64,000 bases of DNA from IMG/VR virus record IMGVR_UViG_3300009104_001210, positions 1 to 64,000 of that record; one strand, written 5' to 3'. The notes beneath the pieces were generated by a model that made no database searches, was not told the DNA's origin, and was given only the letters and a program-made list of their open reading frames with translations. The translations under genes and the position numbers were made by a program. Position 1 is the first letter of the stretch; each line of letters begins with the position of its first letter. This document shows, one piece after another, positions 6,794 through 48,022 of this stretch.

Positions 6794-6801
6794 GAGTTGA
6801 T

Positions 6802-6981: not shown

Positions 6982-7186
6982 AACATTAGAAGAAAGAGGA
7001 GTAGATGCTTTAGAAAAGATATCTGAATCCTTACAAACTATAGAAGATGCCGTATTGGAGTTTGATGTTCCAGCATGGAGCGAAAGATTAGAATGGTATA
7101 TGAATGAATACTATGCTATTTTAAAAGCTAAAGTTGTTGGAAATCCAAATAGACCATCTCGTGATAGAGATGTAAATGAGTCATAA
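6974..7186 (+). CDS. Hypothetical protein (70 aa)
   Basis: AAGGAG RBS. Overlaps both neighbours. Confidence 0.65.
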   Translation: MAKTLEERGVDALEKISESLQTIEDAVLEFDVPAWSERLEWYMNEYYAILKAKVVGNPNRPSRDRDVNES

Positions 7187-10607: not shown

Positions 10608-12070
10608 AAAGGAAAGGAGCAACAAAAAAATGGAAGGAAAAGAAAAAACTTCATGGAGAAATGTATGTAGATGCATTTGATACTGGAATTGAATATTATA
10701 GTTCTAATATAGGAAAAGAATTGAAATATTTAAAAGATGAATGGAATATGTCATATTTGGGAGTGATATGGGGATATGCAAAATCATTTAAAAAAGAAAC
10801 TTGGGATTGGTTAATAGAAAATACTTTTATATTTCCAGATGTAGCAAGATTAAAGAAAGATATATCAGATAGTTTACATCCAGAACTTTTTAATTTTTCA
10901 TATGAAGTGATAAAAAAATTAAATAAACATTTTATTACGATTATTGAAGATACTGAAGGTCATTGTATACAACTTAAAGTACCTGAAAAAGTACATAAAG
11001 TTTGTGAAAAAACAGAAATTCCTGTAGAAAAAATATTAATAATTACTAATGATATTAATGCTAAATCTGATTATGATAATTGGTTTGAAAAAATAAAAAA
11101 ATATGAAACAAAACTTAATATTGTAAGTTATCCTTGTTTTGTAAATAGAATGGTAGGGGATTTTTATGAAAAAATAGCAAAAAGTTTATATAAAGAACAT
11201 TCAAGTACTAGATTTGGTCGTACTACACTTGAATCGGGTATAACTATTCCTATTATTGATATTAAAGAACACATTTATAAACCGAAACGCAGATTAAAAC
11301 CAAATAAGAAATTTATATGTCTTATGGGAAGAGGTACAGATGATAGAAGTTTTTTTTGGGAATATTTTCAAAATGGTGTTAATGTTGATATTTTAAATAC
11401 AATGATTAAACGAATTAAATCCAGAAAATTATCTACAAAATGGGGGAAAGTTGTTGATCCAAAAACAAATTATATTTCTTTTGATGCTTTTAACTATGCA
11501 GTTTTTAAAACAAAACATAAGAAAGAGAACAAAGAAATAGCAAATTTATTACAAGAAAGTGGTCATATATCTTATGTTGCAGAAGATGTAATTTTAGAAA
11601 ATAGTTATGAAGATATAGATACTGGAAATTCCTTAACGCCCAGAGAAAATATTTTGTATGGTAGGTCAGGACCATTAACAGATAAGTTAGAATACTATTA
11701 TGAAGATTCTTATTTTTCTATAGTACCAGAATGTGTAAGTGGAACAATGTTATCAGAAAAGTGGGTAAAACCTATATATCATGGACACCCATTTATGATT
11801 TTATCGCCACTTGGGTGTGGAATATTAAAGAAGATGAGAGAGTGGGGATTTGAAACTTTTCCAGAAATATTTGATGAATCATATGATGAAATGGATAATA
11901 GATTAGATAGAGTGTCTCATATAGAAAATGAAATTTTAAGATTGTGTAAAATGGATATGAAAGAATTACAAAAGTTGCGTGATTCTGTATATGAAAAACT
12001 TGTCCATAATCAGAAAACTTTATTTGATATGAAATTAACACAAAAACCCTTTACGGATATATTAAAATGA
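10604..12070 (+). CDS. GT10-like GT-B protein, paralogue 2
   Basis: KKFICLMGR; YFSIVPEC...LSEKWVKP..HGHPFM...GFETFPEIFDESYD. ATGA overlap at 10604-10607. Confidence 0.55.
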   Translation: MKRKGATKKWKEKKKLHGEMYVDAFDTGIEYYSSNIGKELKYLKDEWNMSYLGVIWGYAKSFKKETWDWLIENTFIFPDVARLKKDISDSLHPELFNFSYEVIKKLNKHFITIIEDTEGHCIQLKVPEKVHKVCEKTEIPVEKILIITNDINAKSDYDNWFEKIKKYETKLNIVSYPCFVNRMVGDFYEKIAKSLYKEHSSTRFGRTTLESGITIPIIDIKEHIYKPKRRLKPNKKFICLMGRGTDDRSFFWEYFQNGVNVDILNTMIKRIKSRKLSTKWGKVVDPKTNYISFDAFNYAVFKTKHKKENKEIANLLQESGHISYVAEDVILENSYEDIDTGNSLTPRENILYGRSGPLTDKLEYYYEDSYFSIVPECVSGTMLSEKWVKPIYHGHPFMILSPLGCGILKKMREWGFETFPEIFDESYDEMDNRLDRVSHIENEILRLCKMDMKELQKLRDSVYEKLVHNQKTLFDMKLTQKPFTDILK

Positions 12071-13479
12071 AAGAACATTACTTAGGAGTATGTATTCCTT
12101 ATAGAGATAACGGAGATGGTGTAAGAAAAAAACATTTAGATACATTAGTTCCTTATCTTACTAAGTTTCTCGATGAAAGGAATATAAAACATAAAATGTT
12201 TATTGGTCATCAAGTAGATGATAAGTTATTTAATCGTAGTGGTACAAAGAATGCCGCATTTTTAGCAGCTAAAGAAGAGGGTTGTGATTATGTAGCATTT
12301 CATGATGTAGATATGTTGCCCGAAGACGGAGCAGATTACAGCTATCCCGAAGACAACCCAATCCACATAGCAACCTATCTATCTCAATGGGATTACAATC
12401 TCAGAGATGTAGAATACTTTGGTGGAGTTGTGTTGTTTACTATAGAGCAGTTTGAAGCAGTCAATGGATATCATACCAATTATTGGGGTTGGGGTATGGA
12501 AGATGATGACTTGTTTTGGAGATGTCATTTAAAGGGAATGACAAACGATAGATATGTTGAAGGACCAGGTGAAACAAATATTTGTACACTAAATGGTGAA
12601 TCAGATTTTATACAAATACCTTCTTCTAGAACGCTTCATAGTATTGGTAGTAGAAGTCATGAAATTGAGTTATTAGTAAGACCACATCAGTTTGCTGAAA
12701 AACAATATTTGATAGGAGATGAAAATAAAAAATATATTGAATATCCTATTTTTATTAGATATGGTTGGGATTATAGTATAAGTTATAATAATTCAAAAGC
12801 TATATCAAGTATGATTTGGACTTGGAAAAATGATTTATTATATAATTGGGCTAAAAGATATCCGAATGAATGGACATTAGTTAATGTAAAAGTTGATGAT
12901 GTTAAAAGAGAAATTAGATTGTTAATTAATGGAGAAGAAACAGATGCACGACATGGAACAGGAACAGAATCACCATTAGTATATAATATGCCACTTAAAA
13001 GATATGGTGGGTCTCCGATTTATCTTGGTAAAGCAAATAGTAATAATGCAAAACAACAAAATTTTATGGGAGATATAGCACATATTAAAATAAAAAATAA
13101 TAGAGATAAAGTAGTTTTACATTATGACTTTGATGAAGTTATAGATAATATAGTTATTGATAAGAGTGGTAATGATAATAATGGAATTATGAATGGTTGT
13201 GAGATAAAAAAGGAAGTTGTTGATAAAATACCATTTACAGTTGTACCACATAGAAGGTTTAGTAAATTTGAATGTTTATTTCATGAAGATGAAGGTATTG
13301 TTAAAGGAAATTTTGTGAGTGATACTACACCTAGAAATGAAAGAATATATAAGTTAAAGATGCAACAGAAAAAAATAGATATAGATACAGATGAGTATGG
13401 AGTAAAAAATATGGAATATGAATTAGTTAGTATAGAAGATTGTTATAATTATCATAAAATGGTTAATGTAAAGTTCTAA
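12067..13479 (+). CDS. GT7 glycosyltransferase with inserted LamG domain
   Basis: VCIPYRD, FNRSGTKN, FHDVD, YFGGV, GWGMEDDD. LamG insert. Resumes VVPHRRFSKF...GVKNMEY. Confidence 0.88.
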   Translation: MKEHYLGVCIPYRDNGDGVRKKHLDTLVPYLTKFLDERNIKHKMFIGHQVDDKLFNRSGTKNAAFLAAKEEGCDYVAFHDVDMLPEDGADYSYPEDNPIHIATYLSQWDYNLRDVEYFGGVVLFTIEQFEAVNGYHTNYWGWGMEDDDLFWRCHLKGMTNDRYVEGPGETNICTLNGESDFIQIPSSRTLHSIGSRSHEIELLVRPHQFAEKQYLIGDENKKYIEYPIFIRYGWDYSISYNNSKAISSMIWTWKNDLLYNWAKRYPNEWTLVNVKVDDVKREIRLLINGEETDARHGTGTESPLVYNMPLKRYGGSPIYLGKANSNNAKQQNFMGDIAHIKIKNNRDKVVLHYDFDEVIDNIVIDKSGNDNNGIMNGCEIKKEVVDKIPFTVVPHRRFSKFECLFHEDEGIVKGNFVSDTTPRNERIYKLKMQQKKIDIDTDEYGVKNMEYELVSIEDCYNYHKMVNVKF

Positions 13480-15008
13480 TGAGTAATTACGAACATGAAA
13501 GAATAAAGAAAGTTTTACCTCAAATAGAGGCAAAGACTTCACCAACATTTTGTCTTGCTAAATGGCACCATGTTACTATCTATCTACATTTAGGTGAAAC
13601 TCATAGTTGTTATCACCCACAACCACACGCAATTTCTTTAGAAGAGTTAAAAAACAATCCTTCAGCATTACATAATACCGTACAAAAGAAGTTTGAAAGA
13701 AAGCAGATGTTAGAGGGTAAGAAACCTGAAGGATGTACTTATTGTTGGAATGTAGAAGCATTAGGTGAAGATTATATAAGTGATAGGAAACAAAGAACTC
13801 TTTCTATATATGAGGGAGATAAGAGTAGATTAGATGATATTATAAATAATCCCTGGGATATGAATGTTAATCCTGAATATATCGAACTTTCTTTTGGTAA
13901 TCAATGTAATTTTAAATGTGGTTATTGTCATCCAAGATATAGTTCAAGATTTTATGATGAAATTAAAGAATATGGTTCTTATTACAAAAATTATACAGGC
14001 AAATATGATGTTGAGTGGTTTGAAGATAGGTTATATAAAAATGATGAAGATAATCCATATGTAAAGGCTTGGTGGAAATGGTGGCCAGAAGTTTCTAAGA
14101 CATTAAATATATTGAGAATTACAGGTGGTGAACCAACAATTCATGGTAGTACTTATAGATTATTAGATGAGATTAATAAAAACCCTATGCCAAATCTTGA
14201 ATTGAATATAAATTCTAATCTTGGTGCAAATCCAAAACTTTTTGATAAATTTGTAGAGAAGTTAAAACCAATTATAGAAGAAAAGAAAGTTAGAGAGTTC
14301 AAGTTATTTACTTCTATAGATAGCTGGGATAAACCTAAAGCTGAATATATGAGATATGGTTTAGATTTAGATTTATTTGAAAGAAATTTTAATAAGTATT
14401 TAACTGAAATTGATAATTCAAAATTATCTTTAATGATAACATTTAATAACTTATGTGTTTCTAACTTTGATTCTTTATTAGAACAAATATTAGTGTGGAG
14501 AGAAAAATATAATACTAAAGCAGCTAGAGAAAAAGGAAATGTTAATCAACCTATACCTTTACAGAGAATTCAAATAGATACACCATATTTAAAAGAACCG
14601 CCACATTATGATATGAATATTTTACCTAAAGAAGAGTTTACACATTATATGGATGATCATTTAAAGTTTATGATTGACAATCAAGATGATGAGGATAATA
14701 CAAAATTTAGAACTATAGAAGTTGAAAAATTTAGAAGGGTTGTAGATTATTTTAAAAGTTCAGAGATAGAACATAGACCATATCCAACCGTTGAGGAATA
14801 TATTAAGAAAGGAAGAAGTGATTTTTATAATTTTTTTAAGGAACACGATAATAGAAGGGGAACAAATTTTTTAAAATCTTTTCCCGAATACACAGAGTTT
14901 TTTAATTCTTGTAAGAGTGAAATAATTAATACTGCTAGAAGTTCTAGGTTAGCTGAAAAAAGAATGAGATTATTAGAGAGAAGGAGAAAAAATGATAAAA
15001 CTAATTAA
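13479..15008 (+). CDS. Radical SAM protein with N-terminal twitch-like Fe-S domain
   Basis: FCLAKW...HSCYHP...GCTYCW precedes NQCNFKCGYC (CxxxCxxC). ITGGEP, NSNL. Confidence 0.88.
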   Translation: MSNYEHERIKKVLPQIEAKTSPTFCLAKWHHVTIYLHLGETHSCYHPQPHAISLEELKNNPSALHNTVQKKFERKQMLEGKKPEGCTYCWNVEALGEDYISDRKQRTLSIYEGDKSRLDDIINNPWDMNVNPEYIELSFGNQCNFKCGYCHPRYSSRFYDEIKEYGSYYKNYTGKYDVEWFEDRLYKNDEDNPYVKAWWKWWPEVSKTLNILRITGGEPTIHGSTYRLLDEINKNPMPNLELNINSNLGANPKLFDKFVEKLKPIIEEKKVREFKLFTSIDSWDKPKAEYMRYGLDLDLFERNFNKYLTEIDNSKLSLMITFNNLCVSNFDSLLEQILVWREKYNTKAAREKGNVNQPIPLQRIQIDTPYLKEPPHYDMNILPKEEFTHYMDDHLKFMIDNQDDEDNTKFRTIEVEKFRRVVDYFKSSEIEHRPYPTVEEYIKKGRSDFYNFFKEHDNRRGTNFLKSFPEYTEFFNSCKSEIINTARSSRLAEKRMRLLERRRKNDKTN

Positions 15009-15096
15009 ACGATTGATTACTAAAATAAAATTAGAAATAAGATATCGTAAAAAAATTAAAGAACTTAAAAAAAGAGATCCTTTTATATACAAATAA
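14992..15096 (+). CDS. Small basic peptide (34 aa) ending RDPFIYK; not in the ORF track
   Basis: AAGGAG at 14981-14986, ATG 14992. MIKLIKRLITKIKLEIRYRKKIKELKKRDPFIYK*. Stop TAA directly abuts ATG 15097. Confidence 0.75.
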   Translation: MIKLIKRLITKIKLEIRYRKKIKELKKRDPFIYK

Positions 15097-16332
15097 ATGA
15101 GTATTAGAGAAAAATATAAAAAGTTAAAAGGATCTAAGGTTTTTTGTATGATGCCCTGGATACATACACACGTGTGGCCAAGTGGTAAAGCATTTCCTTG
15201 TTGTATGTCGGATAGTACAGTTGAATATGGTAATTTAAATGATAATAGTTTAGCAGAGATTTGGAATGATGAAAAGTATAAACAACTTCGTTTAAATATG
15301 TTAAATGAAAAAGAAAGTTTAGAATGTAATAGATGTTATGAAATGGAGAAATCCAATGTGTGGACTTTACGAAAAATGGTAAATCAGACATATGATAAGC
15401 ATTGGGATAGAGTAGAGACAACACAAGATGATGGTACGGTAGAAGAAGTAAATATGGGATATATGGATATTAGAGTTTCTAATATATGTAATTTCAGATG
15501 TAGAACTTGTGGTCCAGAGTTGAGTAGTGCTTGGCATGAAGATCATATTAAACTTTATGGAGAAAAACCACAATGGCCTAAGATAATGAATATAGCAAAT
15601 AATGAAAGGTTTTGGAAAGATTTACAACCATTATTATTTACGGTAGAGGAAGCGTGTTGGGCAGGTGGAGAACCAATTATTACAGAAGAACATTATAAGA
15701 TATTAGATTTTTGGGTTGAAAATAACATGAAAGATGTTAGATTAAGATATACAACAAATTTTAGTAATCTTTATTTTAAGAAAAAAAGTATATTAGAGTA
15801 TTGGAATTCTTTTAATGATGTTAGAATAGCTGCAAGTCTTGATGCTATGGGTAAAAGAGGTGAGTTGATTAGGGCAGGAATGGAATGGAATGTTATAGAA
15901 GACAATCGTAGACAAATGATAAAAGAATGTCCTGATGTATATTTTGAAATAACACCTACAGTTAGTATTATGAATGTGTATCATCTACCAGACTTTCATA
16001 AGGATTGGGTAGATAAAGAACTTTTAGAACCAAATAATATAAGAGTAAATATATTAACACATCCAGAAGATTATAGAATACAAATTATACCAAAAGAAGA
16101 AAGAAAGAAATTTATAGACAAGTATAATGAACATATAAAATGGATTGATGATAATTTTGGTGAAGGTGTTGCTAAAAATGGATTTATGTCTATATTAGAT
16201 TTTTTAGAACAAGGTAATTATGAAGATAGTATATCTAATTTTATTAATAGAAATAAAGCATTAGATAAAACAAGAGAAGAATCTTTATTTGATGTTTGTA
16301 CTGAATTAAAGTTTTTAAAAGATTATGAATAG
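15097..16332 (+). CDS. Radical SAM protein with N-terminal twitch domain
   Basis: FCMMPW...GKAFPCC...ECNRCY; NICNFRCRTC; AGGEP; YTTN; SLDA. Confidence 0.9.
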   Translation: MSIREKYKKLKGSKVFCMMPWIHTHVWPSGKAFPCCMSDSTVEYGNLNDNSLAEIWNDEKYKQLRLNMLNEKESLECNRCYEMEKSNVWTLRKMVNQTYDKHWDRVETTQDDGTVEEVNMGYMDIRVSNICNFRCRTCGPELSSAWHEDHIKLYGEKPQWPKIMNIANNERFWKDLQPLLFTVEEACWAGGEPIITEEHYKILDFWVENNMKDVRLRYTTNFSNLYFKKKSILEYWNSFNDVRIAASLDAMGKRGELIRAGMEWNVIEDNRRQMIKECPDVYFEITPTVSIMNVYHLPDFHKDWVDKELLEPNNIRVNILTHPEDYRIQIIPKEERKKFIDKYNEHIKWIDDNFGEGVAKNGFMSILDFLEQGNYEDSISNFINRNKALDKTREESLFDVCTELKFLKDYE

Positions 16333-17047
16333 AGAATTTATATTTTATAAGAATAAACACAAGGATAAAACTGCTATTTTATTTGCAAGTGGTCCAACCT
16401 TAGAATTATATAACTTTGATTCTTCTAAGGATTGGGTTAGAGTAGGGGTTAATTCTGTAATTTATAAAGAAGATTTAAAATTAGATTATTTTTTTGGTGG
16501 ACAAAATGTAAAGAGAGAAAGTTGGAATCATCCACACCATGATTTAGAAATTAAATCACCAATATTTAATCAGTTGGATAAAAGAAAAGATGAAATGGAA
16601 ATTTTTCTATTAAATAAAATAGTGTATGATATACAAAATAAACCAACGTGGGTAGATAAAGCTAATGATGAACTTTTTACAAATGAAGAAATTCAAATGT
16701 TAGATGCAATTTCTTTCGAATGTCATACGGAAAGAGGAGTATCAGCATTTCAAATTGATATAAATACTAATCCATTATATGATAGAAGAATTGTTTTTCC
16801 TGCATTACAATTTTTACTTTATACAGGAGTTAAAGAAATATATTTGGTTGGATGTGATTGTGGATATGGTGCTTCTTATTTAGAACCAAATAAACGATGG
16901 GATCATGATATAAAAAATAAAACAGAAGGAACTATTTCATTTTGGAAAGAATTTAAAGAGTTTGTTGATATAAATTTTAAAGATGTAAAAATAATATCTA
17001 TTAATCCAAAGGGATTAAAAGGAATGTTTCAGGATGTTTATGAATAA
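16325..17047 (+). CDS. DUF115/Maf (MptE-like) domain protein, putative sugar transferase
   Basis: KTAILFASGPTL, VGVNS, PALQFLLYTGVKEIYLVGCDC. Confidence 0.65.
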   Translation: MNREFIFYKNKHKDKTAILFASGPTLELYNFDSSKDWVRVGVNSVIYKEDLKLDYFFGGQNVKRESWNHPHHDLEIKSPIFNQLDKRKDEMEIFLLNKIVYDIQNKPTWVDKANDELFTNEEIQMLDAISFECHTERGVSAFQIDINTNPLYDRRIVFPALQFLLYTGVKEIYLVGCDCGYGASYLEPNKRWDHDIKNKTEGTISFWKEFKEFVDINFKDVKIISINPKGLKGMFQDVYE

Positions 17048-17666
17048 GTTAGTTACATTTGGAGATAGTTTTGTGGAACAATCTGTTCATACAGAACCAT
17101 TGACCTGGTTAGATTATGTTTGTCAAGAAAATGATTTAATACTTGATTCACGTGGTGTAGGTGGTATTGGTCCTTGGAGCACAATAATGAATTTTTTAGA
17201 TTATGATAAAGATTTTGATATTTGTTTCTTTGCTTGGTCCACCTTACACAGAGAAATGGATATAAAAAAAGATTCGAATGATTATATTTTTTTAAAAGGA
17301 ATTGCTTTATTACAATGGTTTGATAGATTTTTACAAAAAAATTATTCAGATAAAAAAATTATTCATTTATATTCTTTTAAAGAATCAGATTATATTTCAG
17401 ATGACGGATCGGGCCATGAAGTGAATATTTTAAACAAGAACAATATACATTTTGATTTTTATCCTCATATATTTGAACAAGGAATAAATATAAAACCAGA
17501 ACTTTTAGAATTTTCGAAGTTATTAGATTTTAATTTTACAAAAGATATTAGATCATTACATATGGCACCTCAAGTTCATGAATCATTTGCTAAACAACTT
17601 AATAAAGTATTAAAAGACGAATCATTAAATAATGGTGATATGGTGGAGTTCAATCTTGAATATTAA
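17034..17666 (+). CDS. SGNH/GDSL-fold protein
   Basis: VTFGDSF block I, RGVGG oxyanion-type Gly, C-terminal ..LHM.PQVH. Confidence 0.55.
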   Translation: MFMNKLVTFGDSFVEQSVHTEPLTWLDYVCQENDLILDSRGVGGIGPWSTIMNFLDYDKDFDICFFAWSTLHREMDIKKDSNDYIFLKGIALLQWFDRFLQKNYSDKKIIHLYSFKESDYISDDGSGHEVNILNKNNIHFDFYPHIFEQGINIKPELLEFSKLLDFNFTKDIRSLHMAPQVHESFAKQLNKVLKDESLNNGDMVEFNLEY

Positions 17667-19083
17667 ATCTAAAACATTTTGTCCTTTTCCTTTTATGAAC
17701 CTCAATAATAATACTGATGGTTCTATGAAGATATGTTGTGCTCAAAATGAAAACTTACATTTAAAGAAAGATGATGGTTCTACATTCAATGTAGCAACTG
17801 ATGATATAGATGAAGTTTGGAATTCAAAGCACATGAGAGATATCAGAAAGAAACTTTTGAATGGAGAGCAAATACAAGAATGTAACGTGTGTTGGAATGT
17901 AGAAAATTTAGAAAAAACATATGGTGGTCATGAAGCACCAACAAGTACAAGATTAGATAGTATTAAAAGTTATATGGAAGAAGATGGTATTTATTCGCAT
18001 ATGAAAGAGGTGATAGAAAATAATATTAAGATGATGGATGATGATGGATTTATTAAAGATACACTTAATAGTTTAGAACTTAGATTAGGAAATCATTGTA
18101 ATTTAAAGTGTACAATGTGTTGGGGATATAGTAGTAGTAGAATTAACGCTGAACGATTAGACATAGTAAAAAAGTATGGATCAAAAATGCCAGTATGGTT
18201 ATATGATATGTGGTATCCAGCCGAGTATAATATATCCAAAATCAATATGATGTGGCATGAAAATCCGCAGTTTTTAGACAACTTTAAAAAAGTAGCACCT
18301 ACATTAAAAAGATTATATGTAACGGGTGGTGAACCAAGTATAATAAAAGCTAATGATGATATGATAAATCATTTGATTGAGATAGGTAATAAAGAATGTC
18401 ATGTATCATTTACTACTAATCTTACAACTTGGAATATGAACTTGTATGATAAACTATCTTTCTTTGATAAGAGTGAAGTTCAGGTTAGTATTGATGGTTA
18501 TAAAGAATCACAAGAGTATATAAGATATGGTTCAGCTTGGGAAGATATAGAAACAAATTTTAAAAGGTTGATAGAATTACCAGATAAAGTAAGAATTCAG
18601 ATATATAATGTATTTCAGATTTATAATATGTTTGAAACATATAAATTAATGAAATGGTTAGACTCTTTGAGTTTAAAAAGGCATGTATCTTTTTGGCCTA
18701 TATTAATAGATCAACCATTACATTTAAGATCAAATATAATTCCCTGGTCTTTAAGAGATAAAGCTATGGAATTATATAGAGAATTTTATGATTATTCAAC
18801 ATATGATAATAAATACTTAGACTTACATGGTGCAGCTAATAGAATTATTTCTTATTTAGAAAGTGATTGGGAAGCGCACGGTAGTTATGGAAAATATTGT
18901 CAAGGTGTAGAACAAACAGAAGTAAATCAAAGATATATGTTTTATCAATATACAAATTTTATGGATAGGTGTAGAGATACAGATTTTTTTAAAACTTTTA
19001 TTCAATTTGAAGAATTGAGAGAAGAATATGAAAACAGTCTTGATAAAAAAATAGTAACACCTAATTGGTGGATAGATGACTGA
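17656..19083 (+). CDS. Radical SAM protein with N-terminal twitch domain
   Basis: FCPFPF...GSMKICC...ECNVCW; NHCNLKCTMC; TGGEP; FTTN; SIDG. Probable TTG start at 17656 after GGAG (track start 17632). Confidence 0.9.
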   Translation: MNIKSKTFCPFPFMNLNNNTDGSMKICCAQNENLHLKKDDGSTFNVATDDIDEVWNSKHMRDIRKKLLNGEQIQECNVCWNVENLEKTYGGHEAPTSTRLDSIKSYMEEDGIYSHMKEVIENNIKMMDDDGFIKDTLNSLELRLGNHCNLKCTMCWGYSSSRINAERLDIVKKYGSKMPVWLYDMWYPAEYNISKINMMWHENPQFLDNFKKVAPTLKRLYVTGGEPSIIKANDDMINHLIEIGNKECHVSFTTNLTTWNMNLYDKLSFFDKSEVQVSIDGYKESQEYIRYGSAWEDIETNFKRLIELPDKVRIQIYNVFQIYNMFETYKLMKWLDSLSLKRHVSFWPILIDQPLHLRSNIIPWSLRDKAMELYREFYDYSTYDNKYLDLHGAANRIISYLESDWEAHGSYGKYCQGVEQTEVNQRYMFYQYTNFMDRCRDTDFFKTFIQFEELREEYENSLDKKIVTPNWWIDD

Positions 19084-20110
19084 GTTATTAAAAATATTAC
19101 CAGGTGAAAATAAGTATATAAATGTAACTTGGCAAGTAAATGATTGGTGTAATTTTAGATGTTCTTATTGTAATGAGGGTAATTGGGGTGGTAACAATTT
19201 AAATAAAGATACAGATAAGTACATAGAGTTTTTAGATTCTTTGATATCAAAATATCAATCATTTGGTTATGAGTCTTTTAAATTCTTTTTTTCGGGAGGA
19301 GAACCAACATATTGGAAATCATTAATACCAATAGCAAAATTTTTACATAAAAAATGTGATAAACCATTATTAGCTATAAATACAAATTTAAGCAATCCTT
19401 TGAGTTGGTGGTTAGATAATTATTATTACTTTCAAGATGTTGTAGCTAGTTATCATATTGAATATATTAAATACAATAAGTATATTAAGAATGCTAAGTT
19501 TTTACAAGATAGAGTAAATTATTTAGCATTGAGAATTATGATGGAAGAAAGTAGGTTTCAAGAGTGTATTGATATTGGTAGAAAGATGTATAGCGACATG
19601 GATAATTGTGTTGTAGAATGGGTCCCACTACTTAAAGATTTATCAGTAGATGCAGAAATGTGGGATTATGACGAAGAATGGAAAAATGATTTTTTCAAAA
19701 AGACGGATGGTTATATGAGAAAATGGGGAAAAGTAAATGAAAGACGAAAGTTTAAACCTGCTTATAGTTTAGAGGTTTGGAGTGATGGTAAAATTAGACC
19801 TGTAAACTCTAATAGATTATCAGCAGAGAAGTTAACTAATTTTCAAGGATGGACTTGTTTTTTAAATGATGCTATTTTTATAAATACAAGGGGTGATGTT
19901 AGCGCTGGTAGTTGTGGTGTTAGTGATATATTTACTAATATAAACACATGGAAACAAGAAGATTTAGAAAATTTAGGAAATCCTGTTATTTGTCCAAAGA
20001 ATCATTGTACTTGTGGTACGGATGTAATAATACCAAAAATAAATCCAAAAGTTTATAAAGATGTAGGAGATTATAAGATTATTAAAAAGGAAAATATAAA
20101 TGCAACCTAA
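19076..20110 (+). CDS. Radical SAM protein with C-terminal twitch-like Cys cluster
   Basis: DWCNFRCSYC; SGGEPT; NTN; ASYH; C-terminal WTCF...SCG...ICPKNHCTCGTD. Confidence 0.88.
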   Translation: MTELLKILPGENKYINVTWQVNDWCNFRCSYCNEGNWGGNNLNKDTDKYIEFLDSLISKYQSFGYESFKFFFSGGEPTYWKSLIPIAKFLHKKCDKPLLAINTNLSNPLSWWLDNYYYFQDVVASYHIEYIKYNKYIKNAKFLQDRVNYLALRIMMEESRFQECIDIGRKMYSDMDNCVVEWVPLLKDLSVDAEMWDYDEEWKNDFFKKTDGYMRKWGKVNERRKFKPAYSLEVWSDGKIRPVNSNRLSAEKLTNFQGWTCFLNDAIFINTRGDVSAGSCGVSDIFTNINTWKQEDLENLGNPVICPKNHCTCGTDVIIPKINPKVYKDVGDYKIIKKENINAT

Positions 20111-22331
20111 GATAGCAGTTTGTATGTTGCCAGCTTGGTCTTTAGAGACACCACCATTGAGTCTTGGACTGTTAGCAGGTGCTTTAAAAACAAGAGATAG
20201 AGTTGCGAAACAATTTCATATTAACTTACTATCTGCTGAATATGTAGATGAAGAAGCTAGAGAAGAATTATGGGCACCTACGGGTCACTTCTTTTGGACT
20301 AATGATCATTCATTCAATGATAAAATTCTTCCTACTTATAAAGAATATTGGGATAGTTTGATAGATGAACTTAAAGATTATGATATAGTTACTTTTACAA
20401 CATATTTTTCTAATATAGTTGTTACTGATTATTTTGCTGAAAGATTATATAAGGCTAATCCAAAACTTCATATTTTTTATGGTGGACCATATTGTTGGAA
20501 TGCACCTAAAGGTGGACTTTGTATATCATCACCCGATGGTGAACCCGATAGGTATTGGATAAAATTATCATGTGATAATGAAGGAGAAATTGTTATTAAT
20601 GATTTGGTAGATTGTTATGAGAAAGGTATTAGTTATGAAACTGTAAAAGGAATATGGACATTTGGTTCAACTTCTAAAGATAGACATAAATTTACAGGTA
20701 TGAGAATACCAGAAAAAGAGTTAGATACAATACCAACGCCTATTTGGGATGGTGTAGATTTGGAAATTTACGCTAAACATCACTATTCAGGACATGCACA
20801 TTTACCATTACAAGGTTCACGTGGTTGTACTTATAAATGTACATTTTGTTCAGAGACAAGAATTTTTAGATTTAAGAAAGGTAGAAAGATTAAAGAAGAA
20901 ATTTTAGAACAAACAAGAAAATATGGAATTACTCATTTCTCATTTGTGGATTCTCTTGTTAATGGTTCTATGCCACAATTTAAAATATTAGTAAATGAAT
21001 TAGCAGAAGAGGTTGAAAAAGATCCAAAATTGAAAGATTTAAGTCTTGGTGGATATGCAAGAACCCATAAAGAAATGGATAGTAAATTGATGAGAAAGGC
21101 TGCTAAAGCAGGATTTAAATGGTTATCTATTGGAGTGGAAAGTGGAACGCCTAAAATACTTGAGGTTATAGAGAAAAGACAAACAGTTGAGGGAATCGAA
21201 CAATTGTGGAAAGCTTGTTGGAGACACGGAATACGTATGGATGCTAATTGGATATCAGGCTATCCAAGAGAAAATCATATTGATTGGATAATGAGTTTAC
21301 ATTTTTTATATAAGAATAAACATTATATACCCGTAGTAGCAGCAAATCAGTTTCCTGCAGGAGTAACTCCAGGTACAGCACTTGATCAATATAGAGATGT
21401 ATTTAATATTTCACCATTAGGAAATATATTTTATGATTGGATTAGTAATGATGTAAAAAATACTTATGTTAATAGATTTTTAAGAGTGAAGTTATGTCAT
21501 ATGTTTTTAGAAATATGGAAAATTTACTATTCGGGATTTTGGACTGTAAGAGAGAATATTAAACACATAAAATTTAAAGATCCTAAATCAATGTTTAATA
21601 AAGAACAGTATCAAGAATGGGATCAAAGAGCAAATGGAACATTTTGGCAACAGAGACATAATTGGCATGGAAATAGAGAACAATTTAAGATTAGAAACTT
21701 AAATTATAATGTACCATATTTAGAATTTGCTAATAAAGCTGATACAGGAGAATACGATGCTTCAGTTAGTATTGAAGATACTATAAAAATACAAACAAGA
21801 AACGAAATAAGAGTTTGGTGTTGGCTAATGTATCAGATAGCCGGACCATTTGATATTGAAGTGGAGTTTGATGAAGATTATAGTGAACGAAATATAGATG
21901 GTGCTAGAATGATTAGTAAATTTAAATTTCAATCAGAAATGGATGGTAGTTATAGATTATCAATAGATAATAAATTGACAATAGATAAAAGAGCAAAAAG
22001 AACTATTCATATACAATTACCTATAGAATTAAAACATAGTGATAAAGAAATGTGGAAAAAAAGAAAAAAACAAATAGCGAGAAGATTTCATGAAGATGAA
22101 GAACCTTTACATATAGGTGATCATTTAAAAATTAATAAGGATGGTACTATGGTAACTTTTTATGATATTAGTTTTCATGATAAGTATCACGATGTTGGAA
22201 ATATGAATGATGAGTATGAAGACGAAGATTATTTTCGGAAAAAATATGGAGTACCAAATTATCTTGATGCATTAGATATAGAAAAATATAAACTTAATTT
22301 AAAAAGAACTTTTATGACAGGAAAACATTAA
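20100..22331 (+). CDS. B12-binding radical SAM protein with long C-terminal extension
   Basis: PPLSLGLLAG, YGGP, SRGCTYKCTFC, SIGVESG, WISGYPRE. Confidence 0.85.
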   Translation: MQPKIAVCMLPAWSLETPPLSLGLLAGALKTRDRVAKQFHINLLSAEYVDEEAREELWAPTGHFFWTNDHSFNDKILPTYKEYWDSLIDELKDYDIVTFTTYFSNIVVTDYFAERLYKANPKLHIFYGGPYCWNAPKGGLCISSPDGEPDRYWIKLSCDNEGEIVINDLVDCYEKGISYETVKGIWTFGSTSKDRHKFTGMRIPEKELDTIPTPIWDGVDLEIYAKHHYSGHAHLPLQGSRGCTYKCTFCSETRIFRFKKGRKIKEEILEQTRKYGITHFSFVDSLVNGSMPQFKILVNELAEEVEKDPKLKDLSLGGYARTHKEMDSKLMRKAAKAGFKWLSIGVESGTPKILEVIEKRQTVEGIEQLWKACWRHGIRMDANWISGYPRENHIDWIMSLHFLYKNKHYIPVVAANQFPAGVTPGTALDQYRDVFNISPLGNIFYDWISNDVKNTYVNRFLRVKLCHMFLEIWKIYYSGFWTVRENIKHIKFKDPKSMFNKEQYQEWDQRANGTFWQQRHNWHGNREQFKIRNLNYNVPYLEFANKADTGEYDASVSIEDTIKIQTRNEIRVWCWLMYQIAGPFDIEVEFDEDYSERNIDGARMISKFKFQSEMDGSYRLSIDNKLTIDKRAKRTIHIQLPIELKHSDKEMWKKRKKQIARRFHEDEEPLHIGDHLKINKDGTMVTFYDISFHDKYHDVGNMNDEYEDEDYFRKKYGVPNYLDALDIEKYKLNLKRTFMTGKH

Positions 22332-23599
22332 TGGAAGATTTAAAATATTTTTGTTCACATCTTTTCACTTCTTTAAGTTTTGATCAAAGAGGTCGAGTTA
22401 GGGTATGTTGTAATAATTATGAAATACCAAAAGATGAGAATGGGAAACCAATATTAGTTACAGACGAAGATTTTAGTATGAAAAAAGCTTTTGCGAGTGA
22501 TGTTCATATGAGAATTAGAAAAAATATATTAGCAAATAAACAAGATCCTGGTTGTATTAGATGTTGGCAAACAGAAGATAATGGAGCAGAGAGTTATAGA
22601 ACTATTTGGAATAATACTTTAGCAAGTGGGTTTTATAAAGATATAATGCTAGAGTCTGTAAATTCAGATGGTTACATTGATAATCCATATGTTACTTTTT
22701 TAGATTTTACTCTTGGTAATAAGTGTAATTTAATATGTAGAATGTGTAATGTAGATAATTCACATATATGGGAAAAAGAATCTAAATTACTTTATCCAAA
22801 TCAAGAATTAAATATACCTGAATCTACCGTATCTGTAAATGAAGATTTTTTAAGTGATGAATTTTTTGCAACTAATTTAACGCATTTAAAGCAAGTTAAT
22901 TTTCTTGGTGGTGAACCATTAATTATACAAGAACATATTGATTTTTTGAAACAATGTATTAAATTTGATATAAGTCAAAATATAGTATTATTTTATACAA
23001 CAAATTTAACAACAGTAAAAGATGAGTTATTTGATTTGTGGGAAGAATTTAGACACATTTATCTTGGTGTGAGTATAGATGGTTATAAAGAAGTAGATGA
23101 TTATATTAGATACCCATCTAAGTGGGCAAAGTTAGAAAAGAATATAAAGAAAGTTTCTAAATGGAAAAAAGATCTTAGTATGGACTTACAGATTCACGCA
23201 ACATTTCAAGTATTAAATGTTTTAAACTATGATAAGTTGTTAGAGTGGGTATATTCATTGGGTGATTTAGGTTTTTGGAGAATACCATTTGCTAATTGGG
23301 TAACATATCCTTCTTGGTATGATTGTAGAATATTACCTGATGATTTAAAAGATATTGCTGTAGAGAGAGTAAATAAATTTCTTGATAGTAAAAAAGATGT
23401 TAAGTGGGATGTAGGTGAAGAACAATGGTTAGGTATTTTGAAAAGTAATTTAGTAACTTTAAAAGATGAGTTACCTGAAACAGAACAATATGATGCTATT
23501 GCTAGATTTAAAATTTATACAAAAAAATTGGATATGAATAGAAAACAACATATAAGTAATTATATTCCTGAATTAGAGTATTTTGTTTATGAGTCTTAA
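22331..23599 (+). CDS. Radical SAM protein with N-terminal twitch domain
   Basis: FCSHLF...RVRVCC...GCIRCW; NKCNLICRMC; LGGEP; YTTN; SIDG. Confidence 0.9.
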   Translation: MEDLKYFCSHLFTSLSFDQRGRVRVCCNNYEIPKDENGKPILVTDEDFSMKKAFASDVHMRIRKNILANKQDPGCIRCWQTEDNGAESYRTIWNNTLASGFYKDIMLESVNSDGYIDNPYVTFLDFTLGNKCNLICRMCNVDNSHIWEKESKLLYPNQELNIPESTVSVNEDFLSDEFFATNLTHLKQVNFLGGEPLIIQEHIDFLKQCIKFDISQNIVLFYTTNLTTVKDELFDLWEEFRHIYLGVSIDGYKEVDDYIRYPSKWAKLEKNIKKVSKWKKDLSMDLQIHATFQVLNVLNYDKLLEWVYSLGDLGFWRIPFANWVTYPSWYDCRILPDDLKDIAVERVNKFLDSKKDVKWDVGEEQWLGILKSNLVTLKDELPETEQYDAIARFKIYTKKLDMNRKQHISNYIPELEYFVYES

Positions 23600-25154
23600 T
23601 ATATATTTTGGTTGGGATTATTATAACTATTCTCAAAAATCTGAAGTTAAAAATATAATTGAAAAAAAGTTTACAGATTGTAGACCAAAAAATGTTTGGC
23701 CAAATGATGCAGATACGTTGCCATTATTTGATGACAGTTATGATATTCCAAATGGTTGGCATAACTTATATTCTGTAATACGATATTTTTATAATCAAAA
23801 TTATGAAATTCATGACAGAGATACAAGTGATTTAATAAAAGAAGATATACCTTTTATTTATGTAATTGGAACAAAATCTGGACCATTTACTTGGTCAGAA
23901 GATAGAGCTAAATTATTTCTTAATATAAAACAGCACACTAAAGATTATATTAAAAAAGGTAAAGTATTATTGGTTGTTGATATGTCCGATGAAGGATTTC
24001 CAATGAAATCTACAGAAGAAATGACAGTTTCAGAAGCAGGTTATTATGAACATATAGGAGAGGAAGTTTATAAAAAAGCATTACAAGAAGATTTTCCATT
24101 AGAAAATATAGTTTATTTAACTTCAAATTATAAAATTGCTAAAAAGTATAAATCAATTAAACAAATGGTATTACCCTGGACAGAACTTATTATGAAAAAT
24201 AGTTCCCCAAATCCAATTCCAAAATTAAATCAATATCATTTAAGTACTATAGATACATGGAATGGTTATGGAACTGATATTGCAGATTTGGGAGACATAA
24301 CTTTAGATGATTGGGCAGAAAAAAGATTTGAAAAGGTTTTCAATTATAAAAAAGATAATTTATCTGATATGAAAAGTTTTTTATGTCTTTGTAAATTAGT
24401 AAAAGATTGGAGATTATTTCATTCATTAGGATTAAACTATTATGGATTGCATGAAAAAGGTTTAACTTCATTAATATTGTCAAGAGAAAAATTGATTTTA
24501 TCACCTTATATGTTAGGAAAAGTTGAAAATAAAAAAGAAATGTTAGATTATGAGTTTAATACTAGTTTAATAGAAGATGATTTATTAGATGAATATATAG
24601 AAACTGTAATATTACAATGTAGTTTATTTGGAAAGAAAACTTCATTAAAAAAGGTTAAAACTAAAAATAACATTAAGAATTTATTTGAGAAGTTACCTTT
24701 ATATATTGATAGAAAATCTTTTGATGATGTGAATGGATTTACTGCTTGGGATGAAAGTTTTTATAATGACACTTTCTTTTCTTATACATATAACACTTTT
24801 GCTACAAGTAATAAGACTATATATTTAACAGAAAAAATTTGGAAGGATATAATGTGTTTTCATCCAACAATTTTAGTTTCAAATCCAGGATCACTTAAAC
24901 AGTTAAGAAAGTTAGGATATAAAACACACTCACCTTTTATAGATGAACGATATGATAATTTAGCAGATTTTGATTTGAGGTCAGAAGCACTGTTTTTAGA
25001 AATGAATAAATTGTGTAAGATGAGTAAGAAAGAACTTTTAACTTGGTATGAAAAACAATCAGATATATTATTGTTTAATTTTAAGCATTTTGTTAAATCA
25101 AATCCTTCAAAAAAGACAGTTGATGATATAGTAACGTTATATAAAATATTATGA
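23589..25154 (+). CDS. GT10-like GT-B protein, paralogue 3
   Basis: KSFLCLCK; FFSYTYNT...YLTEKIWK..FHPTI...GYKTHSPFIDERYD. N-terminus near-identical to 25151. Confidence 0.5.
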   Translation: MSLNIYFGWDYYNYSQKSEVKNIIEKKFTDCRPKNVWPNDADTLPLFDDSYDIPNGWHNLYSVIRYFYNQNYEIHDRDTSDLIKEDIPFIYVIGTKSGPFTWSEDRAKLFLNIKQHTKDYIKKGKVLLVVDMSDEGFPMKSTEEMTVSEAGYYEHIGEEVYKKALQEDFPLENIVYLTSNYKIAKKYKSIKQMVLPWTELIMKNSSPNPIPKLNQYHLSTIDTWNGYGTDIADLGDITLDDWAEKRFEKVFNYKKDNLSDMKSFLCLCKLVKDWRLFHSLGLNYYGLHEKGLTSLILSREKLILSPYMLGKVENKKEMLDYEFNTSLIEDDLLDEYIETVILQCSLFGKKTSLKKVKTKNNIKNLFEKLPLYIDRKSFDDVNGFTAWDESFYNDTFFSYTYNTFATSNKTIYLTEKIWKDIMCFHPTILVSNPGSLKQLRKLGYKTHSPFIDERYDNLADFDLRSEALFLEMNKLCKMSKKELLTWYEKQSDILLFNFKHFVKSNPSKKTVDDIVTLYKIL

Positions 25155-48021: not shown

Positions 48022-48022
48022 T

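What the first reader, a model, noticed from the sequence alone, without database searches (positions are those of the whole stretch)
13479..23599. Array of radical SAM enzymes with the twitch Fe-S domain placed N-terminal to the core
Seen: four paralogues (13479, 15097, 17656, 22331) carry FC..P(W/F)...CC...CxxC before CxxxCxxC, the reverse of the usual SPASM/twitch order. 13479 has a variant C...C.H...CxxC set. A conventional C-terminal twitch enzyme (19076) and a B12 enzyme are interleaved, and the block is flanked by GT clusters. Established: twitch rSAMs such as BtrN oxidise sugar carbons; N-terminal-twitch proteins are, to my knowledge, functionally uncharacterised. Inference: an expanded set of radical sugar epimerases/dehydrogenases acting on the growing glycan, each paired with a transferase.
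Basis: partly seen in the sequence, partly recalled or inferred. Interest (0 to 1): 0.7.

Follow-up and report, generated by a model that had tools for sequence, protein, structure and literature searches.

The report
Phage array of N-terminal-twitch radical SAM enzymes
A common marine giant phage carries four old, distinct copies of an uncharacterised iron-sulfur radical enzyme, whose extra cluster-binding domain sits at the front instead of the back, inside a 50-kb sugar-building gene island; the enzyme family already has a database name but no known function.

Summary
ORFs 13479-15008, 15097-16332, 17632-19083 and 22331-23599 all match NCBIfam NF033640 (N_Twi_rSAM, "twitch domain-containing radical SAM protein") over their full length, at 298-384 bits against a cutoff of 170. 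Their N-terminal approximately 80 residues align to the C-terminal twitch domain of BtrN, and all four cluster cysteines correspond. The permuted architecture is therefore real, but the family is already curated. I found no paper on its function.

Three things are new here:
- The window is the first 64 kb of a 216-kb marine T4-like jumbo phage.
- All nine radical SAM genes of this phage lie in one sugar-tailoring island.
- The four paralogues belong to four ancient orthogroups that keep the same gene order in many uncultured phages. These phages usually carry arrays of 4-6 copies. A short radical SAM enzyme and a previously unannotated GT10-like glycosyltransferase family often accompany them.

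One-to-one pairing with transferases is not seen. Cellular homologues and cultured-phage homologues lack a consistent glycosyltransferase context. Protein or nucleotide substrates remain real alternatives.

The parts
13479..15008 (+). N-Twi radical SAM, paralogue 1. It belongs to the orthogroup that always comes first in the array, and it has the C(Y/H)H variant of the twitch motif.
   Evidence: NF033640 309.8 bits. Cys 25/44/86/89 precede 143/147/150. Forms a clade with the first-position genes of other phages, support 100. C(Y/H)H in 107/117 members.
14992..15096 (+). Small basic ORF of 34 aa, ending RDPFIYK, between paralogues 1 and 2.
   Evidence: Orthologue of 37 aa in L011/L012. Changes in the conserved half are mostly synonymous. 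Absent from other arrays.
15097..16332 (+). N-Twi radical SAM, paralogue 2. This is the copy that was modelled.
   Evidence: NF033640 383.6 bits and Pfam SPASM at residues 17-81. AF2 model pLDDT 96.5. The family profile (alignment A2, first sequence 15097) matches the BtrN twitch domain over its N-terminal positions 8-80.
16325..17047 (+). Unknown 240-aa protein. It has a faint MptE-like/DUF115 match and has no counterpart in the syntenic relative.
   Evidence: PF01973 E=1.4e-4, below cutoff. L011 has no counterpart.
17034..17666 (+). 210-aa protein with an N-terminal FGDSF motif, putatively of the SGNH/GDSL type.
   Evidence: Motif seen by eye in the translation. No Pfam or PHROG match. Cluster c30 recurs beside arrays.
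17632..19083 (+). N-Twi radical SAM, paralogue 3.
   Evidence: NF033640 298.4 bits, SPASM at residues 17-88. Orthogroup support 99.
19076..20110 (+). Short radical SAM enzyme (cluster c8) with a conserved C-terminal five-Cys region.
   Evidence: CxxxCxxC at 25/29/32. C261, C280, C306, C311 and C313 conserved in 23-27 of 28 sequences. Sits between N-Twi genes in many phages. Only the core matches solved structures.
20100..22331 (+). 743-aa radical SAM enzyme resembling B12-binding (class B) enzymes, with an uncharacterised C-terminal extension of about 330 residues.
   Evidence: Sub-cutoff matches to TIGR03975, HpnJ, BchE and PhpK over residues ~76-420. Pfam Radical_SAM at residues 240-400.
22331..23599 (+). 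N-Twi radical SAM, paralogue 4.
   Evidence: NF033640 314.2 bits. Orthogroup support 94.
23583..27978 (+). Three tandem c1 genes (23583-25154, 25151-26701, 26698-27978). c1 is an unannotated GT-B family resembling GT10 fucosyltransferases.
   Evidence: No Pfam match. AF2 model of 25151 pLDDT 81. Best structural match is H. pylori alpha1,3-fucosyltransferase 2nzw, Z 10.9, followed by other GT-B transferases. The nearest named ESM Atlas clusters are Glyco_transf_10.
9558..12070 (+). Two more c1 genes (9558-10607, 10598-12070).
   Evidence: Same BLAST cluster as 25151.
31580..32680 (+). Sixth c1 gene in the window.
5210..8654 (+). Two GT7-type glycosyltransferase + Laminin_G_3 (ConA-like) fusions (5210-6793, 7176-8654).
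   Evidence: Pfam Glyco_transf_7N/7C and Laminin_G_3.
12067..13479 (+). Third GT7 + Laminin_G_3 fusion. Its stop overlaps the start of N-Twi paralogue 1.
   Evidence: Coordinates.
28113..51207 (+). The rest of the sugar-tailoring island:
- RmlC-like epimerase.
- Split TPP E1-like pair.
- Three SDR epimerases/dehydratases.
- Two UDP-glucose dehydrogenase-like genes.
- Two 2OG-Fe oxygenases.
- PfkB kinase.
- DegT fragment.
- Three further radical SAM genes: 35321 and 48023 (B12-binding) and 45857.
- Carbamoyltransferase.
   Evidence: Pfam. All nine Radical_SAM matches of the genome lie between 13.9 and 49.0 kb.
154..1851 (+). Tail-fibre-like protein with a Peptidase_S74 intramolecular chaperone domain, at the head of the island.
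   Evidence: Pfam PF13884.

Best explanation
**What the proteins are.** The four ORFs are members of the curated but uncharacterised family NF033640.
- Each has a radical SAM core. Its CxxxCxxC cluster cleaves S-adenosylmethionine to give a 5'-deoxyadenosyl radical.
- Each also has a BtrN-type twitch domain moved to the N-terminus. Four invariant cysteines in it should fully ligate one auxiliary [4Fe-4S] cluster.

**Proposed role (inferred).**
- Each of the four orthogroups abstracts a hydrogen atom from a different carbon of a sugar. The sugar is most likely a nucleotide-activated sugar, or else a glycan intermediate.
- The auxiliary cluster then takes the electron from the substrate radical. 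This gives a keto-sugar, as in the dehydrogenase BtrN. If a hydrogen atom is instead returned from the opposite face, the result is an epimer.
- The short radical SAM enzyme (19076), the B12-type radical SAM enzymes, the SDR epimerases, the aminotransferase, the carbamoyltransferase and the oxygenases add further tailoring.
- The GT7-lectin fusions and the GT10-like c1 proteins transfer the products.
- The final glycan probably decorates the virion, or the infected cell surface, of a cosmopolitan marine jumbo phage.

**Shown here:** family membership, the domain permutation, conservation of the cluster ligands, the ancient collinear orthogroups, the phage origin and the sugar-gene context.

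**Inferred only:** the substrate class, the chemistry and the destination of the product.
For: - **Membership.** NF033640 scores are 298-384 bits against a cutoff of 170.
- **Twitch homology.**
  - Family profile positions 8-80 align to BtrN residues 163-238 (E 3e-8 to 8e-8). The four invariant Cys fall on the four BtrN Cys in that segment.
  - Pfam SPASM matches the N-terminus.
- **Invariant residues.** Across 73 diverse members: C17, C35, C77, C80, C131, C135, C138, GGE190-192, N221, S247, D249 and R259. Nearly invariant: R65, R92, R136 and R393. A run of conserved arginines would suit an anionic substrate.
- **Structure.**
  - The model is confident (pLDDT 96.5).
  - Its core is closest to SPASM/twitch enzymes, including the sugar enzymes BlsE and DesII (Z 11-12.5).
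- **Context in this phage.** All nine radical SAM genes lie in one co-directional island with overlapping stop and start codons. The island also holds 3 GT7-lectin fusions, 6 c1 genes, epimerases, UDP-glucose dehydrogenase-like genes, DegT, PfkB and a carbamoyltransferase.
- **Context elsewhere.**
  - 72 of 80 viral loci carry a GT-like neighbour family. In 48 of 80, c1 lies in or next to the array.
  - c1 is GT10-like by structure and by ESM features.
  - c3 is glycogenin-like.
  - A TPR-fused cellular member sits beside a sugar C-methyltransferase/epimerase fusion, RmlD and GT2.
- **One pathway.**
  - There are four orthogroups in conserved order.
  - Natural fusions join 2-3 N-Twi modules in one polypeptide.
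- **Constraint.** Between marine populations, SNPs in the three N-Twi genes covered are 22 synonymous to 10 non-synonymous.
- **Against T4-type DNA sugar modification.** The phage has no thymidylate synthase or hydroxymethylase homologue.
Against: - No substrate or activity is known for any family member.
- Most characterised SPASM/twitch enzymes modify peptides or proteins. The best structural matches include SuiB, anSME, CteB and SkfB.
- The 80 viral loci are mostly related phages, so shared neighbours may partly reflect ancestry rather than function.
- Bacterial single-copy homologues lie next to unrelated genes: endonuclease I, penicillin amidase, two-component regulators, PhoX, fatty-acid-type KS/KR.
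- Arrays in Vibrio phage K566 and the copy in Ralstonia phage RsoM2USA have no detectable c1, c3 or c4 nearby.
- The GT assignment of c1 rests on moderate structural scores only. It has no Pfam match and no sequence match to solved structures.
- I could not read the model coordinates, so the position of the auxiliary cluster relative to the active site is unverified.
Confidence: 0.48

Rival explanations
1. The N-Twi enzymes modify proteins or peptides, as most SPASM/twitch enzymes do. Likely targets are phage structural proteins such as tail fibres. The chemistry could be cross-links, epimerisation or Cα/Cβ oxidation. The neighbouring sugar genes would be a separate function of the same variable region.
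For: - Top structural matches are the peptide maturases SuiB, CteB and SkfB and the protein-modifying anSME. Remote HMM matches are to PapB, ScmE, anSME and similar enzymes.
- The arrays lie just downstream of fibre-like genes in two phage clades. In this window that gene is an S74-chaperone fibre at 154-1851. Elsewhere it is c10 (Peptidase_G2 chaperone domain) followed by the Ser/Thr/Gly-rich c5.
- Some members are fused to TPR repeats, which usually bind proteins.
- A conserved 34-37-aa ORF lies inside the array in the closest relatives.
Against: - No RiPP recognition element or PqqD-like domain was detected.
- The small ORF is limited to near relatives and has no Cys in this phage.
- c5, c6, c10 and c12 are absent from this genome.
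- The twitch domain matches BtrN, a sugar enzyme, much better than it matches the auxiliary domains of the peptide maturases SkfB and TvgB.
Confidence: 0.22
2. The enzymes act on nucleotides, DNA or a cofactor, as viperin, MoaA and QueE do. They would make modified nucleotides for genome protection or host takeover.
For: - The Foldseek top match is viperin bound to UTP/CTP (E 4e-6). MoaA is also among the matches.
- Several conserved arginines are present.
- In L009/L010 the arrays lie near DNA ligase and a PNKP-type HAD phosphatase. In K566 the array is about 5 kb from nicotinamide phosphoribosyltransferase.
- Phage radical SAM enzymes in DNA hypermodification are established (my own knowledge: thymidine hypermodification pathways, 7-deazaguanine QueE).
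Against: - The viperin and MoaA matches cover only the shared core, at TM about 0.33-0.5.
- The genome has no hydroxymethylase or thymidylate synthase homologue.
- A nucleotide role does not explain conserved arrays of 4-7 paralogues interleaved with GT-like genes.
- A nucleotide-sugar substrate would also explain the arginines.
Confidence: 0.13
3. The island makes a free, heavily tailored pseudo-oligosaccharide resembling an aminoglycoside, rather than a polymer-bound or virion-bound glycan. The N-Twi enzymes would play roles like those of BtrN and NeoN.
For: The set of enzyme types matches aminoglycoside pathways. It includes twitch radical SAM, B12 radical SAM, DegT aminotransferase, carbamoyltransferase, kinase, SDR enzymes and glycosyltransferases. 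The comparison with the btr, neo, gen and tob pathways comes from my own knowledge.
Against: - The Pfam scans of the window ORFs showed no inositol/2-deoxy-scyllo-inosose synthase and no resistance or export gene. ORFs beyond about 56.3 kb were not scanned.
- The lectin-fused GT7 proteins and the adjacent fibre gene point to a macromolecular acceptor.
- No phage is known to make such a compound.
Confidence: 0.07

Closest known systems
NCBIfam NF033640, N_Twi_rSAM (twitch domain-containing radical SAM protein)
   Same: All four ORFs match full length above the curated cutoff. They share its domain order and its invariant Cys, GGE, N, S/D and R residues.
   Different: Nothing structural differs. 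The family carries only a name, with no function. The phage origin, the arrays and the four orthogroups are not part of that annotation.
BtrN (2-deoxy-scyllo-inosamine dehydrogenase, butirosin pathway; PDB 4M7S/4M7T)
   Same: - The twitch domain is homologous, and all four auxiliary-cluster cysteines align.
- It has a radical SAM core.
- Its substrate is a carbohydrate, and its pathway also uses aminotransferases and glycosyltransferases (my own knowledge).
   Different: - In BtrN the twitch domain is C-terminal; here it is N-terminal.
- The cores are not significantly similar by sequence (domain E=60).
- N-Twi proteins are about 150 residues longer. They have a helical C-terminal region (residues ~333-410) ending in a conserved D..R..F..FPE motif.
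- BtrN is bacterial and single-copy.
SPASM/twitch peptide and protein maturases (anSME, SuiB, CteB, SkfB, TvgB)
   Same: These are the best structural matches to the core, Z 11.6-12.5. All carry auxiliary Fe-S domains of the same superfamily.
   Different: - They carry C-terminal SPASM or twitch domains, and often an N-terminal peptide-recognition domain.
- The SPASM members among them (anSME, SuiB, CteB, TvgB) bind two auxiliary clusters.
- Here there is one N-terminal four-Cys site and no recognition domain.
Virus-encoded glycosylation systems (chlorovirus and mimivirus glycan machinery; glycosylated mycobacteriophage virions)
   Same: A virus carries its own sugar-nucleotide tailoring genes and glycosyltransferases. 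The comparison itself rests on my own knowledge.
   Different: - To my knowledge none of those systems uses a battery of radical SAM enzymes.
- Here nine of them lie in one island, together with oxygen-dependent 2OG oxygenases.
- The target of the glycan is unknown.
GT10 alpha1,3-fucosyltransferases (for the c1 neighbours)
   Same: - Best structural match is 2nzw, Z 10.9.
- The nearest named ESM Atlas clusters are Glyco_transf_10.
- c1 has a conserved ...ET...F.TEK..KP... motif and an R.HR motif, resembling fucosyltransferase motifs (the motif comparison is from my own knowledge).
   Different: - No Pfam PF00852 match.
- No sequence match to solved structures.
- The N-terminal half is poorly modelled.

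Membership tests
NF033640 N_Twi_rSAM | Full-length HMM score above the curated cutoff (170 bits). | tested here: met
   309.8, 383.6, 298.4 and 314.2 bits, model 1-398. Confirmed on six-frame DNA. The 14 control genomes have no hit above the cutoff.
NF033640 N_Twi_rSAM | A twitch-type four-Cys domain placed N-terminal to the CxxxCxxC core. | tested here: met
   Cys positions. Invariant across 73 members. The family profile aligns to the BtrN twitch domain with all four Cys matched.
Radical SAM superfamily | CxxxCxxC cluster motif and the GGE SAM-binding motif. | tested here: met
   C131/135/138 and G190-G191-E192 are invariant. Pfam PF04055 matches all four, two of them above and two below the gathering score.
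Radical SAM superfamily | Binding of [4Fe-4S] clusters and reductive cleavage of SAM. | not testable with these tools
   The complex-prediction job with SAM and two 4Fe-4S clusters was not folded. This needs anaerobic biochemistry.
Canonical SPASM/twitch radical SAM enzymes (PF13186/TIGR04085 type) | The auxiliary-cluster domain lies C-terminal to the core. | tested here: not met
   The SPASM match is at residues 17-81 and 17-88, upstream of the core, which runs from residue ~120 to ~330.
Canonical SPASM/twitch radical SAM enzymes (PF13186/TIGR04085 type) | The full seven-Cys SPASM motif, which binds two auxiliary clusters. | tested here: not met
   Only C-x12-G-x4-C ... CxxC is present, and no further Cys follow. 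This makes it a twitch domain with one cluster.
BtrN-like carbohydrate dehydrogenases | A homologous twitch domain with four Cys ligands. | tested here: met
   E 3e-8 to 8e-8 to BtrN residues 163-238.
BtrN-like carbohydrate dehydrogenases | Two-electron oxidation of a sugar or cyclitol C-H/C-OH. | not testable with these tools
The sugar-gene context is suggestive only.
RiPP radical SAM maturases | A peptide-recognition (RRE/PqqD-like) domain. | tested here: not met
   No such Pfam or NCBIfam match at E<0.01. The N-terminus is occupied by the twitch domain.
RiPP radical SAM maturases | A precursor peptide gene that travels with the enzyme. | tested here: not met
   A 34-37-aa ORF is found only in the closest relatives. 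No small ORF is shared across the arrays.
Class B (B12-binding) radical SAM enzymes, for ORF 20100 | A B12-binding domain plus a radical SAM domain. | tested here: inconclusive
   Sub-cutoff matches to several B12 radical SAM families span residues ~76-420. Pfam B12-binding PF02310 matches 35321 and 48023 but not 20100.
GT10 fucosyltransferases, for the c1 neighbours | A match to Pfam PF00852. | tested here: not met
   No Pfam match for any of the six window copies.
GT10 fucosyltransferases, for the c1 neighbours | A GT-B fold close to a solved GT10 enzyme. | tested here: met
   2nzw ranks first at Z 10.9 with 279 aligned residues. All other strong matches are GT-B transferases.

The most novel reading that the evidence does not exclude
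N-Twi radical SAM enzymes are a mainly phage-borne toolkit for radical sugar chemistry. Four to seven specialised paralogues act in sequence on nucleotide sugars to make rare sugars: keto, epimerised, C-branched or methylated. GT10-like and lectin-fused transferases then attach these sugars to the virion or its fibres. Abundant marine jumbo phages would then carry a self-made, chemically unusual glycan coat, built by oxygen-sensitive enzymes in oxic seawater hosts.
Probability: 0.3. Interest if true: 0.8.

Novelty: new member of a known kind. Interest (0 to 1): 0.58.

Why it matters
- **A large family with no known function.** It has about 8,700 clusters at 50% identity with E<=1e-30. The 100 nearest ESM Atlas clusters shown are almost all viral.
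- **A conserved multi-step pathway.** It occurs as ordered arrays of specialised paralogues, which points to a multi-step radical pathway that no one has described.
- **Possible new biology.** If the substrates are sugars, this would add new radical carbohydrate chemistry. It would also be a new way for ocean phages to build surface glycans. This phage is widespread: near-identical sequence is in at least 20 marine runs from 12 studies.
- **It can be tested.** Cultured carriers exist: Vibrio phage K566 and Ralstonia phage RsoM2USA. The question can therefore be taken to the bench.
- **A second unannotated family.** The GT10-like c1 family is also unannotated and deserves a name.

Tried and rejected
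- **Cluster geometry.** Complex prediction with SAM and two 4Fe-4S clusters, meant to place the clusters, was not folded and gives no evidence. Model coordinates are not exposed to scripts. I could not measure cluster-to-cluster geometry or test whether the permuted twitch occupies the BtrN position.
- **Literature.** Searches for N-terminal twitch, NF033640 and phage + SPASM + glycosyltransferase found nothing relevant. PDB 8VPO, the best sequence match to the core, is a cyclopropylglycine synthase and matches the core only.
- **Expression.** No RNA run was listed that holds the array. Four metatranscriptomes gave essentially nothing, which is no proof of absence.
- **Near-identical cultured phage.** None found.
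- **c1 near cultured-phage arrays.** hhalign found no c1 beside the arrays of K566 or RsoM2USA.
- **Sequence matches to solved structures.** c1 and c4 profiles have no significant match. The single 15097 sequence has none either.
- **Upstream genes of the main phage clade.** c3, c4, c5, c6, c12 and c13 are absent from this genome. They are not obligatory partners.
- **RiPP idea.** The small ORF is lineage-specific.
- **Recent tandem duplication.** Rejected: the paralogues are 22-25% identical and fall in separate cross-phage clades.
- **Bacterial rather than phage locus.** Rejected: the genome has a major head protein, tail sheath, RNR and PolB.

Full report
**1. Where the window lies**

The window is the first 64 kb of a 216,422-bp IMG/VR virus record. 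The record is linear, and CheckV rates it 100% complete. GC is about 28-31%, and 217 of 222 ORFs lie on the + strand.

PHROG matches outside the window identify a tailed jumbo phage of the T4-like capsid lineage. They are a major head protein (phrog_138), tail sheath, ribonucleotide reductase and a family-B DNA polymerase.

The closest head proteins are 50-57% identical. They come from an uncultured 484-kb phage, Microcystis phage Mel-JY01 and Flavobacterium phage immuto.

Near-identical copies of the region occur in at least 20 marine or seawater metagenome runs from 12 studies, dated 2014-2024.

**2. The observation**

The four ORFs are real and open. Each matches NCBIfam NF033640, N_Twi_rSAM, from end to end at 298-384 bits against a cutoff of 170. 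A six-frame search of the whole genome finds exactly these four above the cutoff. None of 14 control genomes has a hit above the cutoff.

Each copy has four N-terminal cysteines in the pattern C-x12/13-G-x4-C ... CxxC, lying 50-68 residues before the CxxxCxxC motif.

In an alignment of 73 members at 21-50% identity to 15097, the following are invariant: the four N-terminal Cys, the three core Cys, GGE190-192, N221, S247, D249 and R259. R65, R92, R136, D390 and R393 are nearly invariant.

Pfam SPASM matches residues 17-81 of 15097 and residues 17-88 of 17632.

The most direct test was a profile search against solved structures. Family positions 8-80 hit the C-terminal twitch domain of BtrN (residues 163-238) at E 3e-8 to 8e-8. 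In the printed alignment, all four invariant Cys fall on BtrN Cys residues. From my own knowledge of the BtrN structure, these are the four ligands of its auxiliary cluster. The architecture is therefore a true permutation of a BtrN-type twitch enzyme.

The 'variant' in 13479 is a single Cys followed by Y-H. It is a fixed trait of its orthogroup: C(Y/H)H occurs in 107 of 117 members.

**3. Other genes in the block**

- **19076** is a short radical SAM enzyme. It has five conserved C-terminal Cys in a pattern unlike the canonical twitch motif. No SPASM model matches it.
- **20100** resembles B12-binding radical SAM enzymes only below their cutoffs.
- **17034** has a GDSL-like FGDSF motif, seen by eye.
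- **16325** has only a faint MptE-like match.
- **14992-15096** is a 34-aa basic ORF with an orthologue in the nearest relatives. Between the two, its conserved half shows mostly synonymous changes. It is absent from other arrays.

**4. The island**

Pfam scans show the block sits in a sugar-tailoring island of about 50 kb. It contains:

- A fibre-like gene with an S74 chaperone domain.
- Three GT7 + Laminin_G_3 fusions.
- SDR epimerases/dehydratases and an RmlC-like epimerase.
- A split TPP E1-like pair.
- UDP-glucose dehydrogenase-like genes.
- Two 2OG-Fe oxygenases.
- A PfkB kinase and a DegT fragment.
- A carbamoyltransferase.
- Three further radical SAM genes, two of them with B12-binding domains.

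All nine Radical_SAM matches of the phage lie between 13.9 and 49.0 kb. The genes are co-directional, and many stop and start codons overlap.

**5. Relatives and neighbourhoods**

The family is large. There are 8,683 clusters at 50% identity with E<=1e-30 among 1.84 billion proteins. There are more than 532 matches in IMG/VR and more than 238 in species-representative genomes.

The nearest 100 ESM Atlas clusters shown are 93-100% viral. AlphaFold DB holds the fold only under generic names. No solved structure is close; the best Z is about 12.5, over the core only.

I clustered all ORFs within 10 kb of the match in 164 loci.

*Copy number.* Viral loci carry 2-7 copies, most often 4-6. Bacterial loci mostly carry one.

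*Recurrent viral module.* It consists of:
- a first-position N-Twi of the 13479 type;
- two to four further N-Twi genes;
- the short radical SAM c8 (19076 type) or another N-Twi type (c7);
- one or more copies of an unannotated family, c1.

*The c1 family.* It has six copies in the window and eight in the genome. Three lines of evidence point to a GT-B, GT10-like fold:
- Its model (pLDDT 81) matches only GT-B glycosyltransferases. H. pylori alpha1,3-fucosyltransferase ranks first at Z 10.9.
- The nearest named ESM Atlas clusters are Glyco_transf_10.
- Its conserved motifs look fucosyltransferase-like (the motif comparison is from my own knowledge).

*Other viral neighbours.* In the main viral clade the array follows a fibre-like gene (c10), a Ser/Thr/Gly-rich protein (c5), two glycogenin-like GT8 genes (c3) and c4. 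None of these is present in this genome.

*Counts.* 72 of 80 viral loci hold a GT-like family. In 48 of 80, c1 lies in or beside the array. These loci are related to one another, so the counts are not independent.

**6. Age of the paralogues**

The four window proteins are 22-25% identical to each other. In a tree of 77 members, each groups with genes at the corresponding position of other phages, with supports of 94-100. Gene order is kept. This is an ancient, collinear set of specialised enzymes, not a recent expansion.

Two further observations fit the paralogues acting together, under functional constraint:
- Natural fusions join two or three N-Twi modules in one polypeptide.
- SNPs between ocean populations in the three N-Twi genes covered are 22 synonymous to 10 non-synonymous.

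**7. What weakens the sugar reading**

- Bacterial single-copy members lie beside unrelated genes.
- Vibrio phage K566 has four copies and Ralstonia phage RsoM2USA has one. All their neighbours are annotated as hypothetical, and none of c1, c3 or c4 is nearby.
- Some members are fused to TPR repeats. One of those sits next to a sugar C-methyltransferase/epimerase fusion, RmlD and GT2.
- The best structural matches to the core are peptide and protein maturases as well as the sugar enzymes BlsE and DesII. Foldseek ranks viperin first.

**8. Most likely mechanism**

*Shown.* There are two cluster-binding sites, and the auxiliary one has four Cys ligands, as in BtrN.

*Inferred.* Each paralogue abstracts H from a distinct sugar carbon. 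The fully ligated auxiliary cluster accepts the electron, giving a keto product, or an epimer if H is returned from the other face. The near-invariant second Cys of the CC doublet in three of the four orthogroups is a candidate H donor. It is replaced by Y/H-H in the first-position group, which suggests different chemistry there.

The absence of a thymidylate synthase or hydroxymethylase homologue argues against T4-style DNA glycosylation.

My confidence estimates are:
- sugar tailoring: 0.48;
- protein or peptide modification: 0.22;
- nucleotide, DNA or cofactor chemistry: 0.13;
- a free aminoglycoside-like product: 0.07.

**9. Novelty**

The architecture and the family are already curated, so the ORFs are new members of a known but uncharacterised kind. 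I found the following in no paper of the held library:
- the mainly viral distribution of the family;
- the ordered four-orthogroup arrays;
- the companion GT10-like family;
- nine radical SAM enzymes concentrated in one phage glycan island.

**10. Limits**

- I could not read model coordinates.
- The ligand complex job was not folded.
- No transcript evidence was found.
- Substrate and chemistry remain inference.

Noticed in passing
window 14992-15096 (+): A 34-aa basic ORF ending RDPFIYK lies between the first two N-Twi genes. It has a 37-aa orthologue in L011/L012. Changes in its conserved half are mostly synonymous, so it is probably a real small gene. It is absent from other arrays.
   Followed up: partly
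window 9558-12070, 23583-27978, 31580-32680; genome 135185-136342 and 148731-149843: Eight paralogues of an unannotated protein family (c1). The family is GT-B/GT10-like by predicted structure and by ESM Atlas features. It is widespread in uncultured phages next to N-Twi arrays.
   Followed up: partly
window 2007-2975 and 4029-5144 (+): Two paralogous proteins with weak Hint/intein-type matches in their middle and C-terminal parts lie just after the tail-fibre-like gene 154-1851. Their role is unknown.
   Followed up: no
window 5210-6793, 7176-8654, 12067-13479 (+): Three glycosyltransferases of the eukaryote-typical GT7 (beta4-galactosyltransferase) family, each fused to a ConA-like Laminin_G_3 lectin domain. 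This is an unusual architecture for a phage.
   Followed up: no
window 37266-37958 and 41702-42343 (+): Two oxygen-dependent 2OG-Fe(II) oxygenases share one island with nine oxygen-sensitive radical SAM enzymes.
   Followed up: no
window 29557-30150 and 30135-30680 (+): A split TPP-dependent E1/transketolase-like pair inside the sugar island. It could add a two-carbon branch to a sugar.
   Followed up: no
window 16325-17666: Between marine populations, the two non-radical-SAM genes 16325 and 17034 show 2 synonymous and 6 non-synonymous SNPs. The flanking N-Twi genes show 22 and 10. Numbers are small, but constraint may be relaxed. Gene 16325 has no counterpart in the syntenic relative L011.
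   Followed up: partly
P0121-P0137, P0179 (search hits); L175, L177: Natural fusions of two or three N-Twi modules in one polypeptide of 790-1200 aa. Other members are fused to TPR repeats.
   Followed up: partly
L015 (Haliscomenobacter MAG contig, 148 kb): This contig carries the complete viral module (c3, c12, c4, N-Twi array, c1, c13, carbamoyltransferase). It is either a prophage or a phage contig binned with a Saprospiraceae genome, and it may hint at the host of that phage clade.
   Followed up: no
genome 166246-167375 (outside the window): A cluster of five tRNA genes (Glu, Tyr, Ala, Cys, Thr) in the phage genome.
   Followed up: no
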